Positions 898 to 64,000 of a DNA stretch of 64,000 nucleotides are shown here, in pieces. The DNA lies in contig NC_087258.1 in assembly GCF_037042905.1 (NCBI RefSeq), positions 5,952,001-6,016,000 on the forward strand. The letters are read 5' to 3'. The position numbers and the translations under genes are program-made. The notes below the pieces were generated by a model. That model did not search any database, had not been told where the DNA came from, and saw only the letters and a list, made by a program, of their open reading frames with translations. This DNA is from Lytechinus pictus. Its lineage: Eukaryota. The first letter of the stretch is position 1, and every line of letters starts with the position of its first letter.

Positions 898-1026
898 CGC
901 ACTACGACTAACCACGATACTCAGCAATTGTTATTTTAAGAAGAAGTAACATTTGAGTATGAGGCGGACGCACTACGACTAACCACGATACTTAGCAATG
1001 GTTATGTTAAGAACTAACATTTGAAT
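898..1026 (+). repeat. Two-copy tandem duplication, about 70-bp unit
   Basis: cgcactacgactaaccacgatac(t/c)tagcaat...taacatttga occurs twice in a row. Confidence 0.8.
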
Positions 1027-1232
1027 AAATCATCCGTTCAGATGTGTTTTTATGAGGTATCTGCTTAAAAAAATCGTAATCCCTGAAAAGTAGATTATAG
1101 TATAATAAATTTATATCGGTACGCGGTTCCTGAAAATCAGTGGTGTCATGGGCCAACATTTTTGAGGGGGCTAGATAATAGATAGATAGATAGATAGATA
1201 GATAGAAAATATACATTTTTATTACAAAAATC

Positions 1233-1447
1233 CAATCGACGCGAAAACGCTTATTCATGAAAGTATAGACAAAATAATTGATAATATGATTGATTCCTGG
1301 AAGTCTTCTGCCGATGAAAACGAGGGTTTCAGCAGTAACGTAGTGTTCAATGATATCCAGTGTGCTGACTCTGAGATGGAAGAAGGCAATCGGTGGTAGC
1401 CACGATGCCATTTCATGCCAATAGTATAGCGGTTACCGCTATCAGAT
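1233..1447 (-). pseudogene. Inverted fragment (TM6-TM7-helix 8) of a paralog of the 4353-5582 GPCR
   Basis: Translates ASWLPPIAFFHLRVSTLDIIEHYVTAETLVFIGRRLPGINHIINYFVYTFMNKRFRVD, close to the C-terminal part of the intact GPCR. A 10-nt insertion (tggcatgaaa) shifts the frame in TM6, and the fragment then runs into a GATA microsatellite. Confidence 0.85.
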
Positions 1448-4352
1448 AATTACATAGTTGACCCTTCTCTCTTTCATTTTCTATTTCTTTTTCTTGGTCG
1501 TACTTTTTTTTGGGGGTGGGGGAGGGGCAAGAGCTCATATCTGTACGCTGGTGCTGAAAATCTAGAAAAAATGTAGGCCTATGTCCTATATATTTTTGGG
1601 AAAACTTTTTTATTGGGGGGGGGGGCTTTTTAAGACTCGAAAGAGATGGGTTGCTCTTGGTCGGTACTTGTTGGTGGACATTTTGCTTGACAGCTTCAAT
1701 CGGTGAATGATAAGATCACGTGAGCGGACACCAGGTACACGTGATCTGTGTTGATATCAAGTGCAACATGATGGACAGTAAAACAAATGAATAACGGCTA
1801 AAATAAAACAGATCTCATATTTAAATTCCTTTTAACCCAAGTTGAAAAACGTTCTTTTCAACCATCCAACATCTGAATTAATTTATCCCATCATATTTCC
1901 TAATTATTATATGTTTATTTTATCAGTACAAGTCTTAATTTTTATATTTTACTGTCCATAGGGACTGCCTCGACAGAACATTTGCTTTGTTCTTTTGCAG
2001 CTTTCCATTTCATGTTCATTTTTATGCATTTACTGTAATTATCCTTATACAATCTTTGCCTTTTTAAATCTTACTTGCATCTTACTTTTGTATCTTTGTT
2101 TCTTTGTTTCTTTATGTATTTCTGATGTTTTTTATATGCTCAATGTATTTTAATGGACTTGAATAAATAAATGAATGAATGAATGAATAAAATAGCGAAA
2201 CGGAGAGCGGACATTTCCCGTGCTGCATAACAATGTCACGACTGTCGTATTTTGGTCGTACATGAAGCAAACAGACCATAAGAGGATAATTGAGTTGATA
2301 GTGGGTGGGGGGATAAAACAAATATCAATATGAAGGGCTTGATGTGTGCAAGTTCAATTTCCTCCACAGAAAGAGAGAAAACTTTCCGCCAAAATAAAAC
2401 AAAACATTTTAAATGACATGGGATGGTTGACATCAATACAAATAGTTGCTTAATGAGCCAACCATTTTGAGAGGGAACATCATGACGTTTGCTGGAAAAT
2501 ATATAAATGGTCAAGAGCGAGCGAAGCAAGCAAGTAAAATTTTGTTTTTTTTTTGAAATAAATCAAACCCATTTTAATTAAATAATATCTCTAATTCTTT
2601 TGGGATAGATTTTAACACAAAAAAAATGATATAATATTCTACCCTATTACCTTTTATTTAATTTAATTTTCTCCTTTTTAGTGGTAAAACTTTGCTCCTT
2701 ACACAACCATTAGTACGGCAGTGACCTAACTAAAAGATCTCACCATAGTCACTCACAGAGATTTTTGATAGAACGCAATATGCCATACCCCATCCAGGTT
2801 TATCTACTGTAGTATTTTCATTTGAATTTGCTTGGTGTGTTGGACTCCGAGAAAAAATAGAGAAAAGAGGTGAAATGTATTGAATTATATGATTTATTAA
2901 TTTTGACAAAATCTATCGCAAAAATTAGAATATCATTTCTGTTAAAGGCCACTATTTGTCACTCAATCGCTTCGAGCCCTCGGGACTTTTGGATATTTTT
3001 TTGTTTTCGCCATTCGCTATGTTGTGCTCCTCAAAATGTTTCATTAAGCCACTACAAGATATGATTATTATCATCGAAATGTAGCTTTCATTTGGATATA
3101 TATTGCAGGAACGGTTCTTGAATCACCCTGTAGTTCAAATAACATTAGAGGCATCAATCTCACTTGTCGTGATAGCGACAACGGTCACGAATAAGCGCCG
3201 TTGCTTACTCTACGATCTTTACAGTAAAAAAAGGCACCGCATCTCCCTATAAAAAGCACTTTCCACACTCATAGCTGTCACTTAAATTCTAGTTTAGGCA
3301 GATAGCAGGAAACTTGACCGTGCATCATTCGACATCTTCCCGTTCCACCTGCCTGGAAAGCGCGTGTTTGAAACCTATCCAATCTGGAAGTGTTTCATGT
3401 CATTTTTCTCTCGCGTCAGGAAATCTACGGAGTATTATACATTCAGGCATACGATCGACGTCTAGATTGCAATACTATTTCTATTATTGTACTGATTTTT
3501 TTTTTTCTTTTCAACTCTCTTCTATTAAAGGGAAGAGGTTACAATTTTGAAGATCTAAGGGTAGAGTTCTACAGATTCATTTCCTATCAGAGCTTCTGCC
3601 TACAGCCTTGGCAATAATTATGAACCACTTGTACCTCGTCTTAGTTTTAGTATGAAGCGAACAAACACATATCTATTCTCATTCGATCGATATTTTACAC
3701 AATCTGTGACCAAAAAACAACAATAAATATCAAGAGTTCATTTAACATGGACGGATATTATGAGGAAGACGCTTATTATTCCTTTATCCATCAGGACAGC
3801 TCACCCTGCAAAAAGTGCTAAAATAACTCGAAATAAAACTACAGTAAATCTGTTTCCTCATATTCGCCTGACTTTTAAAAGTTACTACGTACTCAAGCGG
3901 TGTGTCTCAGCATTTTCAATGTACTCTTTTCTTTTGGTTCAAAGAAAAAAAATAAGACGCCGTTCGAGCTTTCGATATACCGACGGAAGGAGGGCCAAAT
4001 ACGATTTCTCTAAAAATTCGAATGTTATTGATAGTTGACTTGGAAAATGTAGAAACCTCGAGAACAACTAGGAAAATTATTTGCTTTCGCAATCGCTGCG
4101 AGTATGAATTGGGTGAAGGCTCTCACAAGCTCACCATAACTTTATTGGACATGTTCGAGGGATGAAATTTATTCCGAAAGGAGAAACCATTAGCGACAAC
4201 TGGTATTGCCTGTGTGTTATAACGATCGCCTTTTGAATCGTATTTTTCATGTTCTCGTTTCCCTTAGTGAATTTCATTGCCTTTTCGTTTAATCTGCGAC
4301 CTCAAATACTCGTTCTCGTTATTATTCTTATGACGGGAGTAATTTTGAAGCA

Positions 4353-5582
4353 ATGAATCTCTCATCCCCATCAAGCATCTATGCGGTTATCTTCTACAGC
4401 CTCCAGATCATATTCGGTATTCCCGGCAATGTATTGATCGTACTGGTGTACATACGGAAGAAACGAAAAGTCAGTACGGATATCCTGATCATTGCCCAGG
4501 GCATCATAGACCTCGTGGCATCCCTGCTCGCATCCGTCAACATCCTAAAATCCATCTCCGATCGCTTCACCATCAAAGCCATCTGCCGCATCACTCTCTT
4601 CGGCAACAACTCGCTCGCCTTCTCGTCTTTGTTCCTAACCGCCGCGATTGCGCTTGACCGCTTCTTTTTCGTATGTCGCCCGTATGGAAAGAGAACGTCG
4701 AACAATCGAGCGTTGTGTCTGGCGGTAGCCTGCTGGGTTTTAGGAAGCTCTCTCACCTGTACAAAACTCATCTATGTTGAAGCGGTTCCATCAATCAGTG
4801 GACAAAAGACCTGTCTTGTCATAGATACACTCCAGATCTTTGACAAGCTTGAAGCGTGGTTAAAGACTTCTGGATTCGTACTTGCGTTGGTCGTGAGTAG
4901 CGTTATGTATGGAAAAATATACCATACCATTAGACACCAGGCAAAGATCCATGCTCAGCTGGTAGGAGGTGTATCGAAGAAGGTTACTACGCCCAAAATA
5001 GCTTTCAGAACACAGGAAGAACTGATACAAACAGAGACAGATGCGTGTCATAGCACTCTCGAGCAATCAATGGTAGCATCGGGCGAACCGTCCGATAAGC
5101 AAGAAGCCATTACAATGGAAAGGTGTCCACAGTCCTCAAAGACATCGTTTTTGCAGGTGAATGGAAGAGCTAAAGAACGGGATCCGATGACACCCAATTC
5201 GCTTTCAAGCGCGTTTGACGGTCAAGCTACATCGCAGGTTACCTTCACAAATTCACACTCAAATTCTATTCCCGTCAACTCCCGGCAGAACTCACATCTG
5301 AAGTTGTCTGACCGCGGTGAGAACAGAACGACGAAAATGCTCATGGCGGTAACTGCTATACTTTTGGCATCGTGGCTACCACCGATTGTCTTCTTCCATC
5401 TCAGAGACAGCACACTGGATATCATAGAACGCTCCGTCACTGCTGGAACCCTCGTTTTCATCGGTATGGGACTTCCAGGAATCAATCATATTATCAATTA
5501 TTTTGTTTATACTTTCATGAATAAGCGCTTTCGTGTCGATTGCAAGTGCTTGCTCAAAACAATCACTCATAGGTTCTACTAA
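4353..5582 (+). CDS. Single-exon rhodopsin-class (class A) GPCR, 409 aa, orphan/chemoreceptor-like
   Basis: Seven hydrophobic segments; GN in TM1 (GIPGNVLI), D in TM2, DRF at the end of TM3 (ALDRFFFVCRP), W in TM4, SWLP in TM6, NYFVY (NPxxY variant) in TM7, FR in helix 8. Long S/T-rich ICL3. AATAAA at about 5632. Confidence 0.95.
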   Translation: MNLSSPSSIYAVIFYSLQIIFGIPGNVLIVLVYIRKKRKVSTDILIIAQGIIDLVASLLASVNILKSISDRFTIKAICRITLFGNNSLAFSSLFLTAAIALDRFFFVCRPYGKRTSNNRALCLAVACWVLGSSLTCTKLIYVEAVPSISGQKTCLVIDTLQIFDKLEAWLKTSGFVLALVVSSVMYGKIYHTIRHQAKIHAQLVGGVSKKVTTPKIAFRTQEELIQTETDACHSTLEQSMVASGEPSDKQEAITMERCPQSSKTSFLQVNGRAKERDPMTPNSLSSAFDGQATSQVTFTNSHSNSIPVNSRQNSHLKLSDRGENRTTKMLMAVTAILLASWLPPIVFFHLRDSTLDIIERSVTAGTLVFIGMGLPGINHIINYFVYTFMNKRFRVDCKCLLKTITHRFY

Positions 5583-28383: not shown

Positions 28384-30320
28384 CACATGTATATTTGCGC
28401 TTGTAGCAAGTAAATATCATGGCCTATTGGGTTCGTCGATGCAATTATCGAAATGTGATTTTTGCCAAATTCTGGAAGGTTAACTGAATTGATTATAACA
28501 TAAACTAATTATATTTCATAGAACCTGTTTCCTGAATACTTAACAAAATTGTTTTTCCCTTCCCACTTTGACCATTAACATAAATTGGTCCTGTTCACAT
28601 TGCATTTTTTGTGTGATTTCCTTCTCTCCATTTTTCTTCTACCTTTCTCCTTTTTCTTGGTCATGGAACTCATGAAGTTGCCATTACCCCAGTCCACCCC
28701 TCCTAACCACATCTATAAACCAGCGAGTTGTAGATAATGTAACCGAGATTTCTGCCAAAGTTAATTCTAAGAGAACTCCAAACTTAACTTTAAGTCAAAA
28801 TATCTCACTCAATGCATTAATATCGGCATGGCTCATGAGATTCGCATTTCATGGATGAAACTCGATATACATGGGGGAGAGAGAGAGGTCGGGATTGATT
28901 AAAGTAACTGTCATTTATACCACTTGGGAATAAAGCTAATACATGTATAGATTAATTGAATTTCATATGCCTTGATGATGACTTTCATTTTCGTTCTACC
29001 CGTTTATTCATGTTAATATGTCAATATCGCATCTCCCTCTTCCAGTCATTCAGTCATTGCCATTCAAACATACACCAACACGCCCACCCTCACGTAAGGC
29101 ACGCGCATGCGCATTCTACCAAAAGAAACAGTTTGATTTCTATTCTTGGCACATATTTTATTTATGAAAACAGATACTTGGGTGCTCATTTTATTGGGTC
29201 CTATACAAACTCATTTGAAATCGCTACCATAATTATATAGCATTTATCTTCAAACTATTCATAACTTTTTGGGAATAATATCTAATTAGTTTTCTTCTAT
29301 AGTACAGAGTATACAAAGGAAACATAATCATAACGTATTTTTTTTATTCGGCTTCCCGTTATTTTAGCAGAGAGATTGACTATGGTCCAAGCTAGACTGG
29401 ACGTCAGAATACAGGCCATTTGGTCCACTGTCAACGATGGTCTAATTAACGTTTGGTCTACACTAATACCAACTAAGTTTGATACACATTTAAAATGAAA
29501 TACATCCCACCTCAAGTGTTCTCAAATGGTGTTAGTCGAAGTAAATAATAGACGAAATTGGTTTAGCTTAACTAAAAATTACATAAATTGCAAATGGGCA
29601 ACATGAAAAATTAGACCAAATGTAAATTAGACAAAGGAGATGTAGACCAAGTGGCAATTCAGATGAAATTGTTAGTCAAAGGGGGATATTGTTAGCGACC
29701 TGGTTAGAAGAAGCAAATTACATTATAATTGTTTCCTTTGTTTACTCTGTACTGTTGAAGAAAACTATTTTAGTTATCTTTATAGATGGCAGTATGACAA
29801 TCCATTAGAATTATTTACAATGCCAACTCAATCTCACCTTGGTTTATTTTTTTTTTTCGTCCTTTTCTCTTTTTTAGGGAGGGGGGTCATGCTTTATTGA
29901 ATAAGTCGACTGAAATGAAGTTTGCAGGCACAGACATTTGGTTTTGGTTTAGTGTATAATGCAGAGTCTGAAGAAGTGAGACTAGATTAACTCATAAAAT
30001 GTCGCTGCTGGTTCCATTTGACACACACACACACAGAAAGGGTTAGGGGTCTAGTCTACACGATAGGCATGTTATTTGTGTAAGTGTTAAAATTTCAGTC
30101 TGTGCTTGTAGACTAATTAAACCCCTTCATGAGTTTATTTCATCAAAGGCACCACCCTCTGATCTGATACATCGAAATATCCAAATGTGAAGGAAGCAAA
30201 TGTCTCTATAACGAAGCTACAGTGTGCATTAATCTTTATTATTTACAGCTAAGAAAAAAAAATAGTTTTCGCTTCAAATATAAAATTCTAATTTGTATTC
30301 TTAGTATATTCTTAGACATG

Positions 30321-30449
30321 TGAAGCGAAAGCTCAGTCGGTAGAGGAGGGTTTCGGATTCCAGTGGCCCAGGTTCCATTCCCACTTGGTGCCCTTTGGTA
30401 AGGCATTTGTTCTAATACCAGGTCCCTCGGAGAAGACTTTAAGCCGTCA
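30321..30449 (+). mobile_element. 5' half of a tRNA-derived SINE interrupted by the Transib element
   Basis: A-box agctcagtcggtagag and degenerate B-box ggttccattccc. The body ends gaagactttaagccgtc and continues at 40131. Confidence 0.8.
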
Positions 30450-31562
30450 CACAGTGGGCCAGGAGAGAGCAAAAGTGCGCCAAAACTGGTTTTTGGTCAT
30501 GAAACAAATTTCGTTTTTTTCATGTTCTAAGCAAAGATTGTAGAATGCCTCCATACAATATTTCTCCATTAAATTGATTATTAGTTGCACATTTGTATTC
30601 AATATTACCGGGAAATGACTCTTTACGGCTACCGCATGTGTAAATGACACGTTTTAGATATTTCACTGTTTTAACAAAACGGAATGCTTAATCTATTTCT
30701 TATTCACGGTGCTCTTTGATGAATGATTGTTTTAAGTGATCAAAGATTTTCAAGATAAAATAATAATCCCTTCAGAGGCAATTTTGGACGAAACCATTTG
30801 ACAATGGGGGGTTTTAGCAAAAAAAAAATTCATGAGCATTTCTTTTACAAATTGCTGTCGATTGCTGCGCTGTAAATACCATGACAGTCTTTGTTATAGT
30901 TTATGCTTTACATTGATACCAAATTTAGCTGCATATACGTGCATTTTCTGGAGATATGACCAATTTTCCAGCCACATGTTCGCCGTATTTATCACAAAAA
31001 TCGTTCCAAGTTAGTGTCCCATTATGCGCGTGCCGAACGTTGCGGGTGACATTAAACAAACTCCCCGTCGCGTGCTGGGAGAGAGAGAGGGGGGGGGGAT
31101 GTCTGGCTCAAGTGTCTGGCTCTTGTGACTGGTGTCTGCCTTTAAAATATTTTCGTTAAACATACGTAAAGGCAAGCTTTCATTTCCAATTCCACTAACT
31201 ATATAATAATACATGTAACACAACTTCATTTTGATGCCAAACTGTTCCATCCCGTGTTCCATATCTGATATGCTGTCATCCTGAGAAGATTAATTCTTAA
31301 GGTAAGATTTCCGGGTAAGATTATATATTTGTTTTGTTGTTCATAAACCAAGTAGGGGCTACTGTATATCGCTATACACACATGACTAGGGATGTTTTCT
31401 GACAAAATATGAAAATGTGTATAGGACAGAGATGGGATATACGTGGGCTCTATTACATGTATAAGTTGCGTTATCATTATTGGTATTTATCCCCCCAAAA
31501 AGGGTTTGTAACTTCACATACACGTATGAATTCGTTTATCTCTTGGCTCATTCTAAATTTGC

Positions 31563-34500
31563 TTTTTTTTTTTTTAAAGGATGTTTTATTGTATTCTCTC
31601 AAATCAAAATAAACATTCACATTCCATAAGCAGGTTGTACAAACTATTTGAAACATGATTATAAATTATACAATAAATCCATAACAAATATAATTATACA
31701 AACTATACATCAAACTTCAAAGATACTAGAAATTAATACTAATGCGTTTCAGCAATTACAAAATGAAATATTAACAAGATGTATGAATGATAAGAGAGAA
31801 AAAAAAAGATAAAAAGTGTTGTTCTACCTCCCAACCCCCCCCCCCCCCCCCGTCCCTAGGTTAGGAGCACCCTCCCCTTTTTATGCCTATACTCTACATG
31901 GAAGGGACTACAATTCTCCGTATTTATTTATTTTTGTATTTTTTGTGTGGTTTTGTCTCTCGTTGTATATATACCTTTGCCTCACTCTCTCTATATATTC
32001 TTTTAATTCAGATTTTCCCATTTCCTTAAATGTAGAGACATCTTACCTCTACCTAGCGCCAGCCTTCTTTTTTCTCATTCTTCTTCTTTAAATTTCCTTT
32101 TAATTTCATCCATGGTTATAAGTGCACCCTTTTCCCTCCCTTTGAAAATTAAAAATTTAACAAAGATTAGAAAATGATTGACTAAACGTTCCTTTCCTTC
32201 GTCCTTTAATTCTACACCTACAAGAATTTCCTCCCAGCTTAAATTGCCCGTCGAAATAAAACCAAATATCTTCTTACAATTATCCCAAACCAGACAAGCA
32301 TATTCACATTCCAAAAATAGATGGCGATATGTTTCTTCCTCTTTTTTACAATAACAACAAAGATTATTCTGTGAGATTTTAAAACGGAACAAGTGATGAT
32401 TTGTATAAGCAATGCCGTGTAACATTTTAAACTGAAACTCTCTTAATCTACTGTTCAGAGTACATTGTCTTGGTCTCATAAAAATGTGTTCAATCTTTTC
32501 ATAAGAAAAACTATATTTGTTTTTTAACCTTTCGAAAACATCAGGTATTGTGAAGTTACATTTCATAAAATTTGCATAAACGTTTTTAGATACTAACTCC
32601 TCTATTGACAAAATTCTTTTTCCAGATATAAATGATATTTCTTCCCTAAGAGAAGCCTCTTTGCTATCTATTTTCATATTTCGTTTCCAGCTGACTGGAA
32701 AAGTTTTATAAATTGACTCTATCAAATGAAAATCATTTATGTTTAAACCCTGTCTTTGGAAGTACGAAAATGACCTTAAGTTTTCATCACAATCCATAAT
32801 ATGTTTCAGTCTGTAAATATTTTTTTCATATAATTTTTGGTTAAATATGCATTTCCCTTCAATTCGTACAAATTTATTGTTAAAAAATATCTCATTTCCT
32901 TTATATGTTTCAGATTTTAATCGAAAATCCTTCGTCTCTATCCATACTTCTAGCAAATCTATATAAAATTGCGGCAATACTATCTCCAACACTCCAAGCA
33001 AATAATCGCATGAAAATATAAAATTTCCTCCTAGATGTTTTGTGGCATAATTGAAATATTGTTTCCATTTCATTGCATTATTTTCTTTTAGTCGTTTAAT
33101 CCACATAACTCTCTGTGCCTTTATTAACCATTGAAAATTCATCATTTTCAAGCCGCCTTGATGGTAATCTAAATATATCGTTCTTTTGTTGATCTTATTT
33201 CTGCCAACCCACAAAAAAGTAAAAGCCAACTGATCAAGTTCAACATAAACCCATCCTGGGATTGGTGTGAGAGATGCCACATATATGAATTTTGAAAAGA
33301 TAAATTGCTTTAATAATTGTATTTTGCCCATCAAAGTTAAATCTCTTTGCTTCCACCAGTTTAACAGCTTCTTTATTTTACTTAATATTTCTTTATAATT
33401 CAATCTTTCTTTTACTTCTACATTTAAAGAAAAAAATACACCGAGAATCTTTATAAAATCCACCTTTTGGCCAAAAGATAAATCATATGATTTTCCTTGA
33501 GAGGAACCTAGTAATAAAACCTTCGTCTTATCGCTATTAACTCTAAGTCCTGATACTTTTCTGAATTTTTCTAAAATTTCTATTACTTTTTTGACTGAAT
33601 CTAGATCTCGGACAAAAATAGACATATCATCTGCATACAAAATCTGTTTTACTTCTTCCTTTCCAAAGGAAATTCCTTTAACATCATTATTATATCTTAT
33701 ATTATGCGCTAATACTTCTATGCATAAAATGAAAAGATATGGTGAAAGCGGATCTCCCTGCCTTACCCCTCTTTCCACATGAAAATAGCTTGTAGAATCT
33801 CCTCCATTAAAAATACAACTTTGGCTATTTGTATACAATACTTTGACCCATTTGCGAAATTGCTGGCCAAAACCGAATGAACCTAATGTGTGATGTAAAC
33901 ATTTGTGGGATATCGAATCAAAGGCTTTTTCTAATTCAATTGCTATCATATACCCAGGGATATTATTATATAACGTATGAAAAAGCATATCATCAATTAA
34001 TCTGATAGCTTCTCCTATATTCCTGTTTTTAATAAATCCTATTTGATCTGCTAATACAACGCTTTGCAAAACCTCTTTAATTCGTTTTGCTAAAACTTTG
34101 GATATGATCTTATAATCTGTATTCAATAACGAAATGGGTCTATAATTCTTTACGTAATGTGGGTCTTTCCCTTCTTTAGCTAATAAAATAATAATTGCTT
34201 GTTTTTGTGATGCAGAAAGTTCTCCAAGAGCAAAAGCTTCATTGAATGCCCCAATCAATACATCCTTTATTTCAGCCCAAAATGTACAATAAAATTCAAC
34301 TGTTAACCCATCGTTTCCAGGGGATTTATTTTGCTTCATTTCTTTCAGTACCGAAATACACTCCTCTTCTAATATATCCCCTTCACAGCTTTCGGAATCT
34401 TCAGATGTTAACGTTGGTACATTTTTAAAGAAATCCCTAAAATCTTCCGTGTATTCCCTAGCATAAAGATGGGTATAAAATGATTTAATTTCATTTAAAA

Positions 34501-36550
34501 CTTCTTTCTCGTTTTCAGTAATTTCTTCGTTAACCTTAACTAATTTTGTAATAATACTTTTCTTCTTGTTAGATTGTAATAGTTGACTAAAGTACCTTGT
34601 ATCCCTTTCTCCACTTTCGTACCATGTTTCACGAGACCGAATTTTAATACCTTCATTAATATACTCGTAACTGTCTGCAAGTTCTTTCCTTTTCTTTTCT
34701 ATCTTTTTAATCAATTCTGCATCTACTGAATTTACGCAACTACCTTCTAAACATTCCAATTCCTTTTCGAGAGATTCTTTTTTATTTTTTTTTCCTTAGC
34801 CAGTTTTTTCGAAAAAGTTATTGTGAAAGACATTATTTTCATTTTCAAATAATCCCATACAACTCTTCTATCTTTAACTTCTGTCTTTATTTTCTCCTTC
34901 AATGTAAGTATTTCTATTTTCATCTTTTTCACATATTCTACATTACCACAAAGGCTATTATTAAATTTCCAATAAGAACCATTCTTTTTACGCATTTCCT
35001 TATCAGTTTTATCATACAAGAACAAAAATATAGCTGAATGGTCAGGAGCTATAGATGGTAAAATTTTGCACCTAATAACAACATTTACCAATTCATCTGA
35101 TATTAGCCAATGATCTAATCTGCTTTGCATAAACGGATTATTTTTAGTGAAGGTAAATTGTCTTTTCAATGGATTTCTCTCCCTCCATATGTCTATCAAT
35201 TGTAGTTCCTCCATAAAATTTTCTATTTCTTTACTAACCTTGTCATGTAATTTTTGTTTCACTGTTCCATTATAATCTAATTCAGAATTCATAATAATAT
35301 TAAAATCTCCTCCCATTAAAACAGGTTTGTTACAACTATTTATTTTGTTTAATTTTATAAGCATATCCTTTAAAAATTTTATTTGATGATTTTCTTTATC
35401 CCTCGTAGGTAAGTATACATTACAAAGGACCATTCTATGTCCTTGGATTTCATAATCAATGAGTATTTATCGCCCTTCGTTATCGTGTTTTATATTTATA
35501 AGTTTAAAGTCTAGCGAGGTTTTGATAAGAATGAGTACTCCTCTGCTGTGATTTGATCCATGACTATAGTAACATGACCCATGCCACCCAGAACTCCATC
35601 TATCCTCTACATCTTTTGTACTATACGTCTCCTGTAAAACAATTACATCCCCTTTTTCTTTGCACCATGAAAATATTCGTCCCCTTTTCGCGCATTCTCT
35701 TATTCCTCTAACATTTAAGGAAACAAAATTTAAACATCTATTCATAAAGAAAATCTAAAAAGATCATTCCAACATTTTTTTTGTATAAAAACTTTAAGAT
35801 TTTCACTACGTTATTTATAGGGAGAGTGAGGATTAGACATACCAACATATTTCCTAGTGTAACTGCAGTACATAATCCAATGATAAACTCTAATTTATTG
35901 CGCCATTGTTCAAAACCAAAATGAATGTCGATCAATTCAAATATTGCTATCCCTTCCATGTAGAACATTATCTCTAAGAATCCTGAATAAGGTGCTCGTA
36001 AATCCTGCAGGTAAAAAAAGAAGGGAAAGAATCCCATCTATACGACCCTCTCCAAAGCAGCACTCCCTCACAGCTCACCCTTCTTTACAGGTTGCTGTAG
36101 TATTTCCAATAATAATAATCTACCCCTAATTCTTGTCTTTTTTCTTTGTTTGAACCTTATTGAATTTAAACGAAATAGCTGTAAATAAAATTAATAATGA
36201 AAAAAGAAGAAGAAAAGCTGACATTCAATTAGCATATTCCGCATTAATAAGTTAAATTTTAAACTTACACATATTAAGCAAGTATATATGTTTTTCTGTT
36301 AATAAGAACCTATCCCCAACAAAACAATACAAGTAAAATAATGGTACATGTTTGAAACACAGCCAATCAAAGTCCCAAAGCATTCCTAATCCCCTTGTTT
36401 CTATAATTAAAAAAAAAAAAAAACTTTCAAACAGTCCTGAGATTCACCTTTTGGTAACAAAACACCTAATCCCTATATAACAATATACCAAAGTCATGAT
36501 ATTGGATTCCATATAAGCATATTAAAGGTGCTACACTTTAAAGAAAAAAA
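31563..36550 (-). mobile_element. L1/Tx1-clade LINE (ORF2, 3'UTR, poly(A)) inserted in the Transib element; 5' boundary uncertain
   Basis: Poly(T) at about 31563-31575 preceded on the minus strand by AATAAA. ORF2 below. A U-rich (sense) region lies upstream of ORF2. No ORF1 and no TSD found. Confidence 0.85.
32004..35745 (-). pseudogene. LINE ORF2 (APE endonuclease, reverse transcriptase, zf-RVT), disrupted
   Basis: EN motifs SLNVRG, LQET, GGDFN, SRLD, PDH. RT motifs KSPGNDG, YRPISLLN, EKAFD, RQGDPLSP, YADD. C-terminal CCYC...HLFLEC. In-frame TAA at 35467-35469, a frameshift in an A-run near 34780, another near 32075, and E in place of the first catalytic D (AIELEKAFD). Confidence 0.95.
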
Positions 36551-36574
36551 AAATCACACTATTTCCATCATTAA

Positions 36575-37157
36575 AGGAGAATGAAACTCTTGGAGCAAGT
36601 TAGCTTTTGTGAAAGCAGAAAAATCTAAGAATAAGATCAACAAAACTTTGAGTAAAATAGGACTAGCAATAAAAGAGTTATGAGCATTTGAATGTCGAGA
36701 TCACTAATGCTATGGAGATCCTCCCATTGACAATGCGACCAAGATCTGTGATGTCACACACGTACAACTCTCCCATTTGGACACTGAAAATATACCCCAA
36801 AACATCTCTTTTTGCTCATTCTAATCATATGACAAACGATTCATCAATGATATAATGTTGTGAAACCTCTGTACTTGTCATCTCATAAAGAGAACACCTC
36901 ACCTTGTGATAGACTCTATAAAAGTGAGAATATAAGTGAAATAAGTACTAAAGTAATGAGGGAGTTGTACGTGTGTGATATCACAGATCTTGGTCGCATT
37001 GCCGTTGGGAGGATCTACATGGCACTAGTGATCTCAATATTCGAATGCTCATAACTTTCTTATTATTCATTCAATCTTCCTCAAACTTTCAACAATATGT
37101 TTCTTTGATTTTTCTCTTTGATATGGATTCAGCTGGTTTCAAGGGTTTCATTCTCCT
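36575..37157. mobile_element. Kolobok-like non-autonomous element
   Basis: TTAA|aggagaatgaaac ... gtttcattctcct|TTAA. Long internal inverted segments (caatgcgaccaagatctgtgat / atcacagatcttggtcgcattg). Confidence 0.85.
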
Positions 37158-37444
37158 TTAATGCCAGGAATACAGAACGAAATACTTATGTGACAATAAA
37201 TTCCACTGCAGGTAATGCATACCTAATCATTGGTTCAAAACAACAAAACTTGCATTTTTGGGACATTGTATTGAGGATAACTTCCTTTTGAATATTTAGT
37301 TCTATCTTGCACAAAAGGAACACCTGGAATTCTTTTTTTTTCTTAAAATCTAAGCAAACAAACACTTGGAGCATACATGCGCCAAAAAATATATAAAAAA
37401 AGCCAAAGTGTGACTTGTTTGTTTGAATTCACATTGGTTTCCCC

Positions 37445-39250
37445 AATCAATGCAAGAATGAACAAGAGATGCGATCATGCGCAACTCACTAACGCAAGTC
37501 ACCATATACCCCAATCGATGCCTCATGTTCCAAAATAATAATAAACAAAAAACTTCATCGTGTCTCTCCTTTGGTATTTGTGCAACATTCCTCAAGCCTG
37601 TGGGCATACTGATGGTCTTGTTCTTTTCTCTAATTCTATAGGCCTAATTTGCGTAATGAATAAAGAAAAAAAAAAAAAATAAAATAAAATGCTTGCATAG
37701 CAAGCAGTGCAATACTTTGTGTTCCTAATCAATGCTTCAAGACAATAAACTTGTATTTCTTAATACATTTCAGGCTACCCTTTTATTTCAAATTCATCCT
37801 TGCATTAATTGGGAAAGAAGAAAAGGAAACACTTTGTTATTTCTTTTTTATATCCAAACAAATAGACACTTAAGCATACGCACTTCTGCTATTCAAGTAT
37901 CTAACACATTACAACAGGAAAGTTTCCCATCTTAAGGATTTGCACTCCTTTTCAAAATTATCCCTTTTTTTAATTCCACTGTACCATAGTACAAGAATGA
38001 CCAGATTGCATTATTCTGGCTTTGTGTTCCTAATCAATGCTTCAAGACAATAAACTTGCATTTCTTAATACATTTCAGGCTACCCTTTTATTTCAAATTC
38101 ATCCTTGCATTAATTGGGAAAGAAGAAAAGGAAACACTTTGTTATTTCTTTTTGATATCCAAACAAATAGACACTTAAGCATACATACTCCTGCTATTCA
38201 AGTATCTAACACATTACAACAGGAAAGTTTCCCATCTTAAGGATTTGCACTCCTTTTCAAAATTATCCCCTTTTTTTAATTCCACTGTACCATAGTACAA
38301 GAATGACCAGATTGCATTATTCTGGCTTTGCTTCTTTTTTGTAAGATACTCTCAAGAGTTATTTCTTTTCATCTACTGAATGTAATAAAGCAGTGAAAAT
38401 TCAAGGTGTTATTTGTTTATATAGATTCACTTTAGTTAACTTAATTCATAGAGGATGAAAACGAGAAGCGATCATGCGCAACTCACCATAACGTTAATGC
38501 TACGTTTTGTACACCAATCAATGCCTCGAACACTCCGAATTCCATCTTATGATTCTAATTATAAACAAAAACTTCATATTATCCCTCCTTGAATATGAGC
38601 CACATTCCCCGAGCCGAGCAAGCAATATTAATAATGTTGCACCTGTATAAATAGGCACTCCAATTCTATAGGCCTTAATTAAGTAATGTATGAAGAAAGA
38701 AATGCTTGTCTAACATTAAATACTTGTAACAATCAATACGATGTTTTACGTTCCTAATAATCAGTTCTTTAAACAATAAACTTTGCACTTCTTGGGTAAG
38801 ATATTTCGGGGTGTCCCCCATTCAAATGTTCCAGATTCATCCTTGCATTGATTGGGGAAAAAAGAAAAGGATACACTTGTTATTCCTTTTGATTTTGTAA
38901 TCTAACCAAATAGGCACTTGCAACTATTTTAACAAACATAATAGGTTTACATTTACAACAAGGAAATTTGCCCTTCTTAAGGATTAGCAACATTTTTCAA
39001 ACTTCTCTCTCCTCTCTCTTATTTTCACTACCACTGTATGCCTGATACAAAATGGCCGAATTGTGTAATTTCTATTTACCAATACTCTCAAGAAATATGT
39101 CCTTCTATTCTACTGGCTTTGAAAATAAGCATAAAAAAGTCAAAAGAGTTGCTCATTTGTATAAATTTACTATACTCTACTCAATCAATGCAAGGATGAA
39201 AAAGATGTGCAATCATGAGCCACTCCCCTTCGCAAGTCACTCTAATGCAT
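37445..39250. repeat. Diverged tandem repeat (unit about 700-740 bp, about 2 full copies plus the start of a third) containing a young 305-bp tandem duplication
   Basis: Anchor atcatgcgcaactcac/atcatgagccactc at about 37474, 38471 and 39212. Near-identical duplicated blocks at 37716-38020 and 38021-38330. Confidence 0.85.
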
Positions 39251-39354
39251 GCGATGTTTAATCAATACCTATAATTGTTAGTATCGATCAAGAAGGAAGT
39301 GTATTATTATCATTTCAAGGATTGTTTGGTTTATGACTCTCATTGACTTTATAT

Positions 39355-39522
39355 GTATTCCACAGACTAATGGTAACAGGTGACATTGTGATTAGTAGTA
39401 AGTTTTTAAGAGTACAACAATCACAGCCTCTTCCCCCTGATGTTCAAAGTATGCTAACAGATCCTCTCACCAAAGACATAATAGTTGGTGAGATAGTAGA
39501 GAGAGACTCTGATTCGGAATAA
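39355..39522 (+). pseudogene. C-terminal remnant (possible last exon) of a Transib transposase
   Basis: Translates VFHRLMVTGDIVISSKFLRVQQSQPLPPDVQSMLTDPLTKDIIVGEIVERDSDSE*. This fits the Transib C-terminal pattern as recalled (DV-x-x-RLL-x-x-SDP-x-ISS...PLP-x-E-V-x-x-LL plus an acidic tail). Possible splice acceptor ttccacag at 39365; AATAAA at 39708; about 600 bp from the right TIR. Confidence 0.72.
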
Positions 39523-40130
39523 CTTTGTATACGCCGTTCTTGGTGAAATAGGTATATAGGCCTTGTAGGACCTTGTACTGATTAACCTGCAGAGGACCCG
39601 GCCTCTATTATTTATCACTGGAATCATTATTTTAAAGATTTCACTGTCCACTTCTGGTATCAATCCATTTTAATTCATGTAGGTTTGGTTAATCATTGTA
39701 CCCAGGGAATAAAAATACTCCTTTTCATTTTTTTTTTTACAATTTCACTTTGAATTTTACAATTCCAGATTCATGGTAGGGCGCCCTCTTTAAGCGATAC
39801 TCAAGTCACCAATTGAATTATTTGTACCCCGAGCACAGACTTTTTTTGTTTGTTTGTGTGTTTGCTGTTTGCTAATATGCTTAATTATTGCTGAAATTTC
39901 TCTAAAAGTAGTTTCTGAAAATTTGAAACTTATTGTAGAATTAGGAACATGTAATTTCTTCTCAAATGTTAACAGCCAATCAGAAAACAGTATTTTAACG
40001 ACGTCATCAATATTTGAAAATACTTTTATTGAATTCTACGGGTGAAATTACCCCTATCTCCCAAATTTAATCGTACAAATGTGTGAATAATGGGTTTTGG
40101 CGCACTTTGGGTTCATTCTGGCCCACTGTG

Positions 40131-40205
40131 CGTCGGTCCTCGGGTTGCTTGCTTGCGAGCATTCATGCTTTCTTAGCAATCAGGTAAAAAAAATCACCAC
40201 CATAA
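40131..40205 (+). mobile_element. 3' half of the SINE interrupted by Transib
   Basis: cgtcggtcctcgggttgcttgc...agcaatcaggtaaaaaaaa continues ...ttaagccgtc from 30449. Confidence 0.75.
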
Positions 40206-58869: not shown

Positions 58870-61800
58870 GTTATGAAAATACTTACCATGATTTTCTTAT
58901 TTACGAGATAACTGGATATACTCATTTGATTTGCTAGTTCATTACGATTAACTTGCACGCCGAATAAAAGTACACAATTTTTCCTGCGCGCGCGCAGCAT
59001 CTCCCTACGCACGCACTATCCCAAGATCATCACGCAAAAAGGCGTCCATTTCCTCTCATGAGCCTGAACGCAAGACATGTTGCCACGCAAGGCGAGGGGT
59101 CGGTGGGAGGGTTCAAATGAGTATATCCAGTTATCTCGTAAATAAGAAAATCATGGTAAGTATTTTCATAATTTACATCAATAACTGGGATATACTCATT
59201 TGATTTGCTAGACCAACACGGATTCAACGTGAAGGGAGGCATGTCTAGACTAAGAAAGTGCGTACAAAAATAGAGAGATGAAGACACGAAAGGCCGCTGC
59301 CTTAAGGACAGAGGAGGTAAATAAGGCCTCATGTGAAGAAAGGTCCTTAAGGACAAGGAATTAGAAGAGCGCCAAAAAGGCGGTCCTCAAGATGTCGTAT
59401 ACGACGATTCCATAGAAAGAGCCCAAGAAGAATGATACTATAATATCATGGGCCCTCGGCCTAGTGTCAGAAGGAGAACATCATCACCAACTGACTTGAT
59501 CGTTTCAACAATCCAGCGTGAGAAGATGTCTCGAGAAGCTGTCGCAAACGGCTCGTGCGACAAAACAACCAACTGCACAGAGTTGGGAATTGTCTGAAGA
59601 ATGGCAAACAAAGACGAGGGTTAGAAGTAACACCTAATCTAAGCCTATCCCGGCAACGGTCCGGGAGCAATGCATAAGTATGCAAAGCTTTGTACTGTAA
59701 ATGGTTATATATAAACAGATACAGGAGGGATCTCGACTGATAGACAGACAAAAGATACCCTGAAAACCGACCCAAGAGGGAGTTAGTCAAGCGTCAAGAA
59801 CGACCGACAGGTGCCATGACGGACTAAGCCATACAAGCTCAACGTTTGAGAAAAACTTAAGAGGTTGTAAGATTCGGATTGAAGGTATTAATCATCCGTA
59901 ACCGGAGGGATGATAATTGCCGATGATCAAAAAACGATCCGATTTTGTTGAAAATTTCGACAAGAATCGTGATCGGAAGACTGAAACTTGTACGGTTCAG
60001 TAAGTGATCCATCAATCAATCTGAGAAGGCGACAGCGGGGCTAATAAAAGCCACGGTCAAGTCACCGGCTTAATAATTTAAGCCAAGCCGCAACCATGCA
60101 AACGTAAGGAATGCAAGATAACTCAGAAGCCCCCGCGTGGGAGAAGGCGCCCAGAATTCGATATCTGTCTCAAATGCGTGAGGGCAGAACATCTGCAGAA
60201 TTCTGATAGAGAGCTGTGGCAGGACGTTTCCAGCGGTCCGAAAAGGACATGGAACGACAGAGAGTAAGGTTGAAGTAAACCACTCGTAAGGCAGTCAATG
60301 TGTCGAGAAAGGCGACTGAGTGCCATTCTGTTAATAAGAAAATGCCACGGACCTGCTGTCTATGTAGAATAGAACAGTCTTGTCAAATCAGCTCAAACGG
60401 GCGTGTCGGAGAAAAACGCGGCACGCATCACGACATAATAAGTGTGATAGACAGCGGATCCCTTTTGTCCCGTACTAAATAAAACACCCGCCCGAGGGTG
60501 CAGTGCCCGCGGCGGGAGAGGTGGGCGGTGGTTTGGCTGAAGGCACCATCGCCGAGAGGGTCCGTAAGACTAGGCTACGATGGATGTCCGCTGAGCGGAG
60601 TAATCCCTAGTCGCAGCAAGCGTACGCCAGAGATGAGCTGGCGAACAATGTCTCTGTCATGATCTTACGTGTAAACGATGATCAAGAGATGTCGGTCAAG
60701 ATGTTCTGAACCAACAGACAACGCCAGACATGATACCTCAACAGTTACGTTCCCGACGGAATCGAGTGAGGTAACAACGGCCCTGTCCTATCAAGGTTAG
60801 GGACGGAAACTGGCTAAGAGTGTCTAAGTCCTCGCTTGACGAAACAAGCGGAGGAGAAAGGCGACTTGAGGAAAATAATCACCAATATTTCCCTCAGTCT
60901 GCGATGAGAACCAGTTGTTTACGAAAACAGCCACAAGGCCTGGTTTCTCTGGTGATCGCAAGGGCAAGCACCGCCGGCGCCGGTTGCAACAGCATGGAAC
61001 AGACCGATATCGGTAAGATAAGGAGTTGCGAGAAACTGCGGGGGGCGGCAAAAATGACGCCCTAAGCAGCGGGGGATGAGAATCTATGCTTCTAAAAAGA
61101 AGAACTCCAGTGAAGTAAATCACTTTCATGGAGGGACTCATCCACAGTCGGCCCGAGAGAAAGCGGGTCGTGGTGATCGTGGTTAGACAGGCATAAGTAT
61201 GCATACACACACGTATACATTTTAAACATAAATGTATATCCACCACGATTACATCATCCTCGGTCACGCAGTGACCATGGTCACATACATAGCATGGAAG
61301 GAGGATGAAAGCAGCCTGCGAGGCGACTCAAGTGTGCCGATTGAAAAAGCTTCTAAATAGAAGAAAACTCGACACACGGGCACGGTAAATGCATCGACCG
61401 TAGCCCACTCCACACGAGGAAGCGGCGGAGACGCCCGCAAGCTTGACCCACATAGAGGGCAGTCTATCGGATAGACTGTTTGAGCTCGACCGATGGCCTG
61501 GTGGCGGACAGTTTGGTGTGAACTCGCCGACCCGGCACGGTGGGTGCGTCCAGGAAGTAGGCATAGAAATGCCGACAGAAAAAAACCTGGGGCTTGAAAC
61601 AAGCCTGAACGCACGCACACAGCCGACAATCTAAAGAGATATATGGCTGTTTCTTTCCACCGAGATGATGCTTACCCGACCGGGAAAGACTCGGGGAACA
61701 AGTTGTGAATGTCAACAGGAGGGGTATCTGGCGTATAAATAGCCGATTCCCTCCGGGCGTTCGGTGCGGGTGCTGCCGGCGGGGTCCGGGGGGACGACCG

Positions 61801-64000
61801 ATGATGGCAGCTCGGGCAGGGCTCGCACGAGCCGCCCGAATACGAGACAAATAGGTTACAAAATAACCATAATGCACCGGGTGGTGAAGGCATAGCGATT
61901 ATTAAGTATAGGAGAACTATTAATCGCCGTGACATTCAGATGCGATATTTATGCTCATAAGCTCGGCAGAGCTACGAGATAGTGAGACATACCGCTGAGC
62001 GGTGATGGTGCTAATATCGGAGTCGCCCTCACTACAGCGGCGATCGCTGGAGGACGGGTGTCTGTACTAGCCCTGACTCTAACCTTGCAAGGAAGAGAAG
62101 GAGTTAAAAGTAAAGACAGGGCACCCTTACTTTCGTATAGAAAGTGAGGTTCAGGCCAAAAGCTGACGGTCCCGTCGCCTGGGCGGACGGTCCGCGGGCG
62201 TGATAGGTTGCCCTCTCAAAAACAGCCAAACATTCTCATGAGAGAAGGAAGGCATGCGGTATGTTAGAAAATCTTACCTCCAATCTACAGGCCCGCCTAG
62301 GGGGTAGAATGGAGCGAGTTACCGCTGAAAGAGCCGTTGCCAAAAGCGATGCCCGGTCAAACTGTGAGGCTTGACGTAGAGGGCGAATTCGGGAGTACCT
62401 GCATATTAATGGGGGATACCCATGCAGGTGAACTCGCCGACGGCTCCCCGGAGTGCGGGCTGGCGGGAGAAACTCAATCCGCTCAATGCCCGTCACCGGC
62501 AATAAGACCGACAGAAAACAGTCAAGCGGCTGCAGCGACCAACCAGCGACATACGAGGGCTTGCCGACTTGCTGGGTGAGACCCATACGTCAGCAGCACC
62601 TGTGCATATCATGAAAACACCCGTGCGGGTGAAAAGGGCCGGCAATTTCAAAGAAAAGGGCCGGTGGCTGGTGCGAGGCTGTTGATAAGCCCAGCCGTCG
62701 CGTAGCGGCGGTCTGTAATGACGGAGAACACGAGGGTAAGAACCCGTAATGCTCGGGACGTGTTGATGCAACCTGTAAGGATGCAACGTCCAGCCGTCGG
62801 TTATCGAGAGCTTGCCGACATGTTGGCTTGAAAGCCGTATGTTGGAAGCACCTGCATGGAAACGGGGTCACCGTGTAGGTGAACAGCGTTTCAATAAAAG
62901 CCCGGCGTGAGAGGGCAGGTGACTGCTTGAACCGCACGGTGCTTAGCACGGCGGCTAAAGCTGACATGAAGCGGGAGTCTGGTGACATAATGGGGACGAT
63001 GCCCGTATGTCGATAACACCTGTGTATTAGCGGGAATTTCCCTTGCAGGTGCGTGAGCCGGCGAATCATGAAATTGCCGGTGACTCTCCGAGGTATGAGA
63101 TGGCGAATGTCTGCTTGGCCTGCCCGGTGCTTGACACGGCGGCTGAAGCTGACATGAAGCGTGGGGGAATTTACCCGCACTGCTCGTGGGCGTGTGAAGC
63201 AACATGAGAGTTGCGACGCGTGACCCACAATTATCGGGAGTCTGGTGACATAATGGGGGGCGATGCCCGTATGTCGATAACACCTGTGTATTAGCGGGAA
63301 TTTCCCTTGCAGGTGCGTGCGCCGGCGAATCATGAAATTGCCGGTGACTCTCCGAGGTGTGAGATGGCGAATGTCTGCTTGACCTGCCTGGTGTTTGACA
63401 CGGCGGTTTTAGCTGACAGAGAGCATGAGGATAAAAATCCGTGATGCTCGAGGGCGTTCTGTTGTAACATGAAGTTACGACGCCTGACAATCGGCACAAG
63501 AATTAGAAAGAAAGGGTCTGCCCGCGAAGCGGGGTTAGCAACCTAGAATTTCTTCTTCTTCCTCTTCTATGCGGCCCCCGCCGGGGGGCAGAATAGGGCA
63601 CAAGAGACAGGGGGGACGTGATATCTCGCATGAGAAAAATCACCCAAATCTGATCAAGCCGTTTAGGCACATGAACGCTAATTCCACGGTTCCACCTTTA
63701 AGGGCACGTGGACGCGATTCCACAGTTCCACCCTGATCAGAAAATCGTGAGAATGACGGAGTCGAGCTCACGTGTCTCTAGCGACTAGGGGCTGGTAGCC
63801 CTTTGCTAATGCTCCCTGAAGGAGACTGACAAAGCATCGAGCCTAGTCTGTGCCGGGAAAAGAGTCCCATGTTCTTAACCCGGACTTGATGGACCCGATA
63901 GCCGGTGGGTAAAGCAGCCCTGGAGGAGTGAAGTTTTCTATACTAGTACCACACTCCCCAAAATAGGTTCAGGTCCCGTCGAGGGAGCCTTGGCTATCAC
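58870..64000 (-). mobile_element. Decayed DIRS-type (tyrosine recombinase) retrotransposon in the intron after exon 5
   Basis: Abrupt GC rise. Terminal segment 58870-58927 recurs inverted at about 59116-59172, and 58908-58938 recurs directly at about 59181-59210 (ITR/ICR layout). Frameshifted YR C-terminal motif RAHD...SSWAL...DILRTAF/WRSSNS near 59370-59460. RT-like PGFF motif near 61590. Confidence 0.75.
62970..63418. repeat. Direct duplication of about 185 bp inside the DIRS element
   Basis: cgggagtctggtgacataatgggg...gacacggcgg...agctgaca at about 62972-63156 and 63235-63418. Confidence 0.9.

What the first reader, a model, noticed from the sequence alone, without database searches (positions are those of the whole stretch)
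39340..39715. Hidden Transib transposase C-terminus, possibly the last exon of an intron-containing transposase gene
Seen: a 56-codon plus-strand frame, below the ORF-track cutoff, reads VFHRLMVTGDIVISSK...PLPPDVQSML...DSDSE* and is followed by AATAAA (39708). It lies where a transposase 3' end is expected. It resembles the classical Transib tail, as recalled, more than the RAG1 tail. Its 5' edge coincides with a plausible acceptor (ttgac...tatgtattccacag), and strong donors (aag|gtaaga at 31302) lie near the left end. This suggests a spliced transposase gene. The alternative is a deletion junction just upstream of VFHR.
Basis: partly seen in the sequence, partly recalled or inferred. Interest (0 to 1): 0.72.

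Follow-up and report, generated by a model that had tools for sequence, protein, structure and literature searches.

The report
Leftover tail of Transib transposase
The short hidden reading frame really is the last 55 codons of a Transib "jumping-gene" enzyme, but it is a dead leftover in a copy that lost the rest of the gene by internal deletion, not the last exon of a spliced gene, so it is an ordinary finding.

Summary
In detail: an open frame runs 39337-39522 (+), and AATAAA sits at 39708. The first half of the reading is right. Window 39355-39519 is 91% identical (50 of 55 residues, tblastn E 4e-27) to the C-terminus of Lytechinus pictus LOC129266800. It is 50-72% identical to the tails of about 700-residue transposases that match the solved Helicoverpa Transib transposase (E 1.7e-99). 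Those transposases sit in elements whose inverted ends (CACAGTGGGCCAG...) are the same as the ends of the 9.7-kb element here (30450-40130).

The intron reading is refuted.
- Eight independent genomic relatives carry one uninterrupted frame through the matching position, including a complete 4.1-kb element with a single 707-codon ORF.
- Every relative stops matching at exactly 39355, and nothing else of the transposase is in the window.
- The proposed acceptor AG (39364-65) lies inside the conserved VFHR codons.
- The bases before 39355 are AT, not AG.

Other notes of this scan had already called this element an old non-coding Transib in a sea urchin. Interest is low.

The parts
39355..39519 (+). 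Remnant of the last 55 codons of a Transib transposase (VFHRLMVTGDIVISSK...DSDSE). It corresponds to HzTransib residues from about 445 to the end, downstream of the catalytic-glutamate motif.
   Evidence: tblastn with P0007 (L. pictus LOC129266800) gives 50/55 identical, E 4e-27. Eleven relatives all match from 39355. The link to HzTransib runs through contiguous ORFs.
39520..39522 (+). TAA stop, at the same place as the stop of the closest relative (P0007 ends on the same DSDSE).
39337..39354 (+). Six in-frame codons (LSLTLY) that match no transposase. The frame is open here by chance, after TGA at 39334-36.
39353..39355 (+). Breakpoint (deletion or rearrangement junction). DNA and protein homology to every transposase-bearing relative begins here.
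   Evidence: blastn matches start at 39353-39355. tblastn matches start at 39355 for 11 proteins.
39364..39365 (+). The AG proposed as splice acceptor. It is the first two bases of the conserved Arg codon of VFHR, so it is not an exon edge.
39271..39352 (+). About 80 bases of unknown origin between the end of the tandem-repeat unit and the transposase tail. Other copies in sequencing runs share them (contigs at 39281-39349).
39708..39713 (+). AATAAA, at chance level (1.6 per kb on this strand).
30450..40130 (+). The host element: a non-autonomous, internally deleted Transib copy of 9,681 bp. It is colinear with the complete 4.1-kb relative L008 at both ends and at the transposase tail.
30450..30486 (+). 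Left inverted end, CACAGTGGGCCAGG...GTGCGCCAAAAC, preceded by CGTCA.
40094..40130 (-). Right inverted end (the same motif on the reverse strand), followed by CGTCG.
   Evidence: Loose ends at 40131 show unoccupied versions of the target repeat.
39976..40015 (+). Subterminal 40-base motif. It is repeated several times in the 3' region of the relatives L001, L002 and L008.
32075..35745 (-). Nested LINE (endonuclease plus reverse transcriptase ORFs) inserted inside the Transib copy.
36560..37172 (.). Nested high-copy inverted-repeat element (MITE-like).
37384..39270 (+). About 2.5 units of a roughly 740-bp repeat, with a 305-bp internal duplication, occupying the place where the transposase ORF would be.
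31299..31307 (+). aag|gtaaga donor-like string. No coding sequence of the transposase lies upstream of it.

Best explanation
Window 39355-39522 is the fossil 3' end (last 55 codons plus stop) of a classical Transib transposase gene. It is preserved in a non-autonomous Transib copy (30450-40130) that lost about 92% of the ORF by an internal deletion or rearrangement with its right breakpoint at 39353-39355.

Shown: the homology, the breakpoint, the shared ends, and the absence of any other transposase sequence.

Inferred:
- The deletion arose in the usual way for DNA transposons, by abortive gap repair or slippage.
- The copy could move only if an autonomous relative supplied transposase in trans.
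- The 61-codon open frame has no function. It lacks a start, all three catalytic residues and every DNA-binding domain. It stays open only because it is short and about 9% diverged from a working gene.
For: (1) The peptide against 1.84 billion proteins gives four hits (E 5e-6 to 2e-4). Two of them extend upstream into LPIGMMSEE.QE..NK...HARK.SR.
(2) One of those hits, P0002, matches HzTransib 390-461 at E 4e-12. Its DAFNRLMVTGDIVISS aligns to HzTransib DILNMLIISSDPLIS.
(3) The ORFs of L002 match HzTransib at E 3e-51 and 1e-37. P0008 (707 aa) matches HzTransib 7-459 at E 1.7e-99.
(4) L. pictus LOC129266800 (P0007) is 91% identical over 55 residues, up to the shared stop.
(5) All 11 close relatives begin matching at exactly 39355, and nothing else in the 64-kb window matches below E 0.3.
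(6) The inverted ends of the window element, L001, L002 and L008 share CACAGTGGGCCAG-N-CAAAGTG.GCCAAAA. L001 and L002 have perfect 5-bp CGCCG duplications.
(7) The window element is colinear with the complete L008: 30450-30526 = 1-78, 30880-30932 = 440-492, 39367-39455 = 2739-2827, 39976-40135 = 3938-4107.
(8) Contigs of three organisms carry A at 39458, which restores the Lys seen in the relatives (MLKD), and a synonymous C at 39399. The number of distinct contigs in run X3 rises from 1-5 upstream of 39304 to 22-32 inside the tail.
Against: The genomic DNA of the closest relative, L. pictus LOC129266800, could not be fetched. Continuity of the ORF is therefore shown only in relatives whose tails are 50-72% identical. 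The origin of 39271-39352 is unknown, so the left partner of the junction is not identified. The tail alone (61 aa, or a 59-position profile) does not reach HzTransib, so the link is transitive, through ORFs that contain both parts.
Confidence: 0.93

Rival explanations
1. One reading: the frame is the terminal exon of an intron-containing Transib transposase gene, spliced at 39365/39366 from exons further left (donor near 31302).
For: An acceptor-like pyrimidine-rich ...ccacag and a donor-like aag|gtaaga exist. A sea-urchin Transib, Transib1_SP, was predicted to have two exons (PMC1131882). Some relatives may have an intron or a frameshift near the 5' end of the gene.
Against: The conserved codons V-F-H lie upstream of the proposed acceptor, in the same frame. 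The two bases before the homology edge are AT, and the nearest upstream AG (39318-19) is followed by an in-frame TGA. No other transposase segment exists in the element or the window, even with 11 full-length queries. Only about 850 bases lie between the left end and the 'donor', too few for some 650 codons. Eight genomic relatives have an uninterrupted ORF across the site, and L008 to L011 have one ATG-to-stop ORF of 701-707 codons. No joint at 39365/6 appears among those listed in four runs (contigs only).
Confidence: 0.02
2. A chance open frame in AT-rich junk DNA with no relation to any transposase.
For: Frames of 61 codons or more are common (228 in the window). Pfam and the Protein Data Bank give nothing for the peptide alone.
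Against: tblastn gives E 4e-27 against a sea-urchin protein, and E 1e-7 to 2e-10 against ten others, always at the same coordinates and frame. The element ends are of the same family as those of the transposase-bearing relatives.
Confidence: 0.01
3. The tail is kept for a reason. Either the last 55 codons lie inside the 3' region needed in cis for transposition, or the fragment has been taken up into a host transcript.
For: Many more distinct contigs carry the tail than carry the sequence upstream of it. Runs guessed to be RNA hold contigs over 39425-40021.
Against: A higher contig count is expected anyway, because autonomous copies and other deletion derivatives share the tail. The 'RNA' label of those runs is a guess, their contigs run on past the stop codon, and no joints are listed there. 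An open frame of 55 codons at about 9% protein divergence needs no selection.
Confidence: 0.04

Closest known systems
Classical Transib transposons of sea urchin (Transib1_SP and the non-autonomous TransibN1_SP; Kapitonov & Jurka 2005, PMC1131882)
   Same: Same host group. Ends begin with the CACAGTG heptamer. The target duplication is 5 bp and GC-rich (the paper gives CGGCG for Transib1_SP; L001 and L002 here have CGCCG). Autonomous size is about 4.1 kb (4132 bp in the paper, about 4.1 kb in L008). The transposase is about 680-710 aa. Non-autonomous deletion derivatives exist.
   Different: I could not compare sequences, because the paper's supplements are not held. Whether this is the same family is therefore untested. 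Transib1_SP was predicted to have two exons, whereas the relatives found here encode the transposase in one ORF.
Helicoverpa zea Transib transposase (PDB 6PQN and related entries)
   Same: The full-length relative P0008 aligns to residues 7-459 at E 1.7e-99. The window's VFHRLMVTGDIVISS corresponds to DILNMLIISSDPLIS at about 444-459, after the catalytic-glutamate motif SEEA.EARNKD.
   Different: The window keeps only this tail. The echinoderm-type proteins have about 200 extra N-terminal residues and an acidic Ser/Asp-rich end.
RAG1 and amphioxus RAG1L (ProtoRAG)
   Same: The C-terminal profile of the family also aligns to RAG1 931-1037, which includes the acidic RAG1 tail, and to BbRAG1L 555-624.
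   Different: The match is far weaker (E 6.5e-5 and 1.6e-5, against 1.2e-41 for HzTransib). There is no RAG2-like gene: L008 holds a single gene between its ends. The two ends of the window element have the same layout.
Lytechinus pictus LOC129266800 ('uncharacterized protein', 321 aa)
   Same: It is 91% identical over the last 55 residues and ends on the same DSDSE stop. It is colinear with, and 68% identical to, P0008 390-691.
   Different: It carries the C-terminal half of the transposase, including the glutamate motif. The window copy has only the last 55 codons.

Membership tests
Transib superfamily DNA transposon | Terminal inverted repeats that begin with CACAGTG/CACAATG (like the V(D)J signal heptamer) | tested here: met
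   30450-30486 and 40094-40130. The first 13 bases, CACAGTGGGCCAG, are identical at both ends and in L001, L002 and L008.
Transib superfamily DNA transposon | 5-bp, GC-rich target-site duplication | tested here: met
   CGTCA and CGTCG flank the window copy (4 of 5 identical). Contigs of unoccupied copies of the target repeat read ...CCTTAAGC followed directly by the sequence from 40131. L001 and L002 have perfect CGCCG.
Transib superfamily DNA transposon | Encodes a DDE transposase homologous to Transib transposases and the RAG1 core | tested here: not met
   Only the last 55 codons survive, and no catalytic residue is present. The copy is therefore non-autonomous. Relatives with the same ends do encode the enzyme (HzTransib E 1.7e-99).
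   Homology starts at 39353-39355, preceded by AT. The proposed AG at 39364-65 is inside the conserved Arg codon.
   tblastn with 30 relatives (P0005-P0034), 11 of which match the tail, finds nothing else below E 0.3.
   The frame is uninterrupted in the genomic DNA of L001, L002, L005, L006 and L008-L011. The genomic DNA of the closest relative, P0007, could not be obtained.
RAG-like (RAGL/ProtoRAG) transposon | RAG1-like transposase closer to RAG1 than to Transib, with a convergent RAG2-like gene | tested here: not met
   The profile hits HzTransib at 1.2e-41 against RAG1L at 1.6e-5. The complete relative L008 has a single gene. The window element has no ORF over 100 aa apart from the nested LINE.

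The most novel reading that the evidence does not exclude
The family is still alive. An intact, intronless 4.1-kb Transib encodes a 707-aa enzyme that is identical in a TARA metagenome scaffold and two unrelated sequencing runs. It, or its Lytechinus counterpart, may still mobilise the many sea-urchin deletion derivatives. Those derivatives may keep the last 55 codons because the 3' 780 bases, coding tail included, are needed in cis.
Probability: 0.1. Interest if true: 0.35.

Novelty: new member of a known kind. Interest (0 to 1): 0.12.

Why it matters
It matters little in itself. Non-autonomous DNA transposons that keep a scrap of their transposase gene are routine, and Transib elements in sea urchins have been known since 2005. 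There are two small gains. First, the copy at 30450-40130 is tied by sequence to a concrete transposase family: L. pictus LOC129266800 and 695-719-aa intact relatives with matching ends. Other notes of this scan on Transib-type mini-elements of the same genome said that no such enzyme had been found. Second, this Transib lineage encodes its enzyme without an intron at the tail. That removes a suggested parallel with split RAG1 genes.

Tried and rejected
- Pfam on the peptide and on P0001-P0004, P0007, P0008 and the L005 ORF: no usable family. The only hit was a sub-threshold RAG1 match for the beetle (Zophobas morio) relative P0020.
- phmmer of the 61-aa peptide against the Protein Data Bank at E up to 10: only latherin at 0.64, which is noise.
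- A tail-only profile (A1, 59 positions) against the Protein Data Bank: nothing.
- Word search with the 61-aa peptide: no candidates.
- Supplements of PMC1131882, for the Transib1_SP sequence: not held.
- Paper search for the accession prefixes of the related contigs: nothing, so the organisms of L001-L011 remain unknown.
- Inverted-repeat search in L005: no left end on that contig.
- Fetching the gene of P0007: not on record.
- An apparent upstream extension of homology (SR...IDF in another frame, proposed by MAFFT with a 21-base and a 5-base gap): rejected. The 91%-identical P0007 finds nothing upstream in any frame.
- Depth figures were not used as copy numbers. All four runs are contigs, so only contig positions and contig counts were used.

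Full report
**The observation.** The + strand frame is open from 39337, just after TGA at 39334-36, to TAA at 39520-22. It reads LSLTLYVFHRLMVTGDIVISSKFLRVQQSQPLPPDVQSMLTDPLTKDIIVGEIVERDSDSE. AATAAA is at 39708, 'ccacag' ends at 39365, and aag|gtaaga is at 31299-31307. None of these is unusual on its own. The window has 228 stop-to-stop frames of 61 codons or more, 100 AATAAA on the + strand, and 102 YYYCAG.

**Context.** The window is animal DNA. It holds a rhodopsin-type receptor gene and LINEs. The frame lies 608 bases inside the right end of a 9,681-bp element bounded by inverted repeats that start with CACAGTGGGCCAG (30450-30486 and 40094-40130). The flanks are CGTCA and CGTCG. In the sequencing runs, contigs that match the DNA to the right of 40131 are preceded by ...CCAGGTCCCTCGGAGAGGACCTTAAGC. 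That is the sequence found left of 30445, so these are unoccupied copies of the target repeat, and they fix the element's borders.

The interior is mostly later additions:
- a LINE on the minus strand at 32075-35745;
- a very abundant inverted-repeat element at 36560-37172;
- about 2.5 units of a roughly 740-bp repeat at 37384-39270.

**Is it a transposase tail?** The peptide alone hits nothing in Pfam, in the Protein Data Bank or in the word-indexed protein search. phmmer against 1.84 billion representative proteins gave four short hits, at E 5e-6 to 2e-4. Two of them extend upstream into ...HILLVHGALILSSSVLPIGMMSEEVQEVRNKDNKMYRREHARKASRVDYMND, followed by AFNRLMVTGDIVISS.

One of the two, P0002, matches the solved Helicoverpa zea Transib transposase at residues 390-461 (E 4e-12). 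The motif shared with the window aligns to DILNMLIISSDPLIS.

The contigs that encode these proteins, and further contigs found with them, carry Transib transposase genes:
- The two ORFs of L002 match HzTransib at E 3e-51 and 1e-37.
- L005 has a 573-codon open frame.
- L008 is a complete element of about 4.1 kb. It has the same CACAGTGGGCCAG ends and a single 707-codon ORF (P0008), which matches HzTransib 7-459 at E 1.7e-99.

A word search with the C-terminal region of the L005 protein then found the closest relative, 'uncharacterized protein LOC129266800 [Lytechinus pictus]' (P0007, 321 aa). Its last 55 residues are 91% identical to window 39355-39519 and end on the same DSDSE stop (blastp E 1.6e-30; tblastn on the whole window E 4e-27).

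A profile of the C-terminal 130 residues of 19 relatives plus the window peptide hits HzTransib at E 1.2e-41, amphioxus RAG1L at 1.6e-5 and RAG1 at 6.5e-5. The ends of the window element are of the same family as those of L001, L002 and L008. L001 and L002 have perfect 5-bp CGCCG duplications.

**Is it a last exon?** No, for five reasons.
1. Genomic DNA of L001, L002, L005, L006, L008, L009, L010 and L011 has one uninterrupted frame across ...SRxDxMxD|VFHRLMVTGD.... In L008-L011 the whole 701-707-codon gene is one ORF.
2. All eleven close relatives start to match the window at exactly 39355. DNA similarity starts at 39353-39355. With a relative that is 91% identical downstream, such an abrupt edge must be a structural breakpoint and cannot be gradual decay.
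3. The bases before the edge are AT. The proposed acceptor AG (39364-65) is inside the conserved Arg codon, which would put the conserved V-F-H codons in the supposed intron. The next AG upstream (39318-19) is followed by an in-frame TGA.
4. No other piece of the transposase is present in the element or anywhere else in the window. Only about 850 bases lie between the left end and the 'donor' at 31302.
5. The window element is colinear with L008 at the left end (1-78 and 440-492), the tail (2739-2827) and the right end (3938-4107). The roughly 2.2 kb in between is missing.

**Reads.** All four runs that could be laid are assembled contigs, so they cannot show RNA ends or expression levels. They do show four things.
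- The stretch from about 39281 to 40130 occurs in several organisms.
- All contigs covering 39458 carry A, which gives Lys as in the relatives' MLKD. All contigs covering 39399 carry a synonymous C.
- In run X3 the number of distinct contigs rises from 1-5 upstream of 39304 to 22-32 inside the tail. This is expected if autonomous copies and other deletion derivatives share the tail.
- No joint at 39365/6 is among those listed. The list was truncated, so this is weak evidence.

**Mechanism.** The homology, the breakpoint, the shared ends and the loss of the ORF are shown. It is inferred that the copy is a non-autonomous derivative made by internal deletion. It could be moved only by transposase supplied in trans from an autonomous relative. 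It has since been broken up by nested insertions. The remnant has no start codon, no catalytic residue and no DNA-binding domain. At about 9% protein divergence over 55 codons, an open frame is expected without selection.

**Open points.** The origin of 39271-39352 is unknown. The genomic locus of the L. pictus gene could not be fetched. The organisms behind contigs L001-L011 are unknown. I could not check whether this family equals a described Repbase family such as Transib1_SP.

**Earlier notes of this scan.** On this same window they called 30450-40130 a Transib-family transposon and called its right end an ordinary, old, non-coding Transib in a sea urchin. My own tests of the ends, the duplication and the coding content agree.

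**Verdict.** This is a real but ordinary transposase fossil. The intron hypothesis is refuted.

Noticed in passing
L008:1-4107 (also L009, L010): A complete Transib of about 4.1 kb with CACAGTGGGCCAG ends and one intact 707-codon ORF (762-2885). The identical protein is encoded in a TARA ocean metagenome scaffold and in two unrelated public runs. It may be an active element of an unidentified marine animal.
   Followed up: partly
P0007 (L. pictus LOC129266800) and P0008-P0014: Earlier notes of this scan on Transib-type mini-elements elsewhere in this genome said the enzyme that moves them was not found. This transposase family, whose elements share CACAGTGGGCCAG ends, is a candidate worth testing against those elements' ends.
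   Followed up: no
window 30300-30449 and 40131-40200: The Transib copy sits inside a SINE-like, apparently tRNA-derived repeat. Contigs of unoccupied copies of that repeat appear as loose ends at 40131 and confirm a 5-bp target duplication.
   Followed up: partly
window 32075-35745 (-): A nearly intact LINE nested in the Transib copy. It has an 894-aa reverse transcriptase ORF with a zf-RVT domain, plus endonuclease-like ORFs of 228 and 92 aa separated by frameshifts.
   Followed up: partly
window 36560-37172: An inverted-repeat element (161-nt arms, 80% complementary) that is extremely abundant in all four sequencing runs, with many internal-deletion variants among the contigs.
   Followed up: no
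window 37384-39270: About 2.5 units of a roughly 740-bp repeat, with a 98%-identical 305-bp duplication (37715-38276), filling the place of the lost transposase ORF. Unit similarity ends at about 39256-39270.
   Followed up: partly
window 1007-1411 (-) and 4353-5582 (+): A 409-aa rhodopsin-type receptor ORF, and on the opposite strand 3 kb away a 134-aa ORF whose first 60 residues repeat the receptor's C-terminal end. This is probably a partial inverted duplicate.
   Followed up: no
window 60000-64000: GC content jumps to 51-55%, with long overlapping minus-strand ORFs that contain internally repeated peptide blocks. The stretch is unlike the rest of the window.
   Followed up: no
alignment A4 against the Protein Data Bank: The family's C-terminal profile aligns to mouse RAG1 931-1037, through the non-core acidic RAG1 tail. 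The Ser/Asp-rich acidic end may therefore be an old shared feature of Transib and RAG1 C-termini. The E-value is only 6.5e-5 and the tail part is low in complexity.
   Followed up: no
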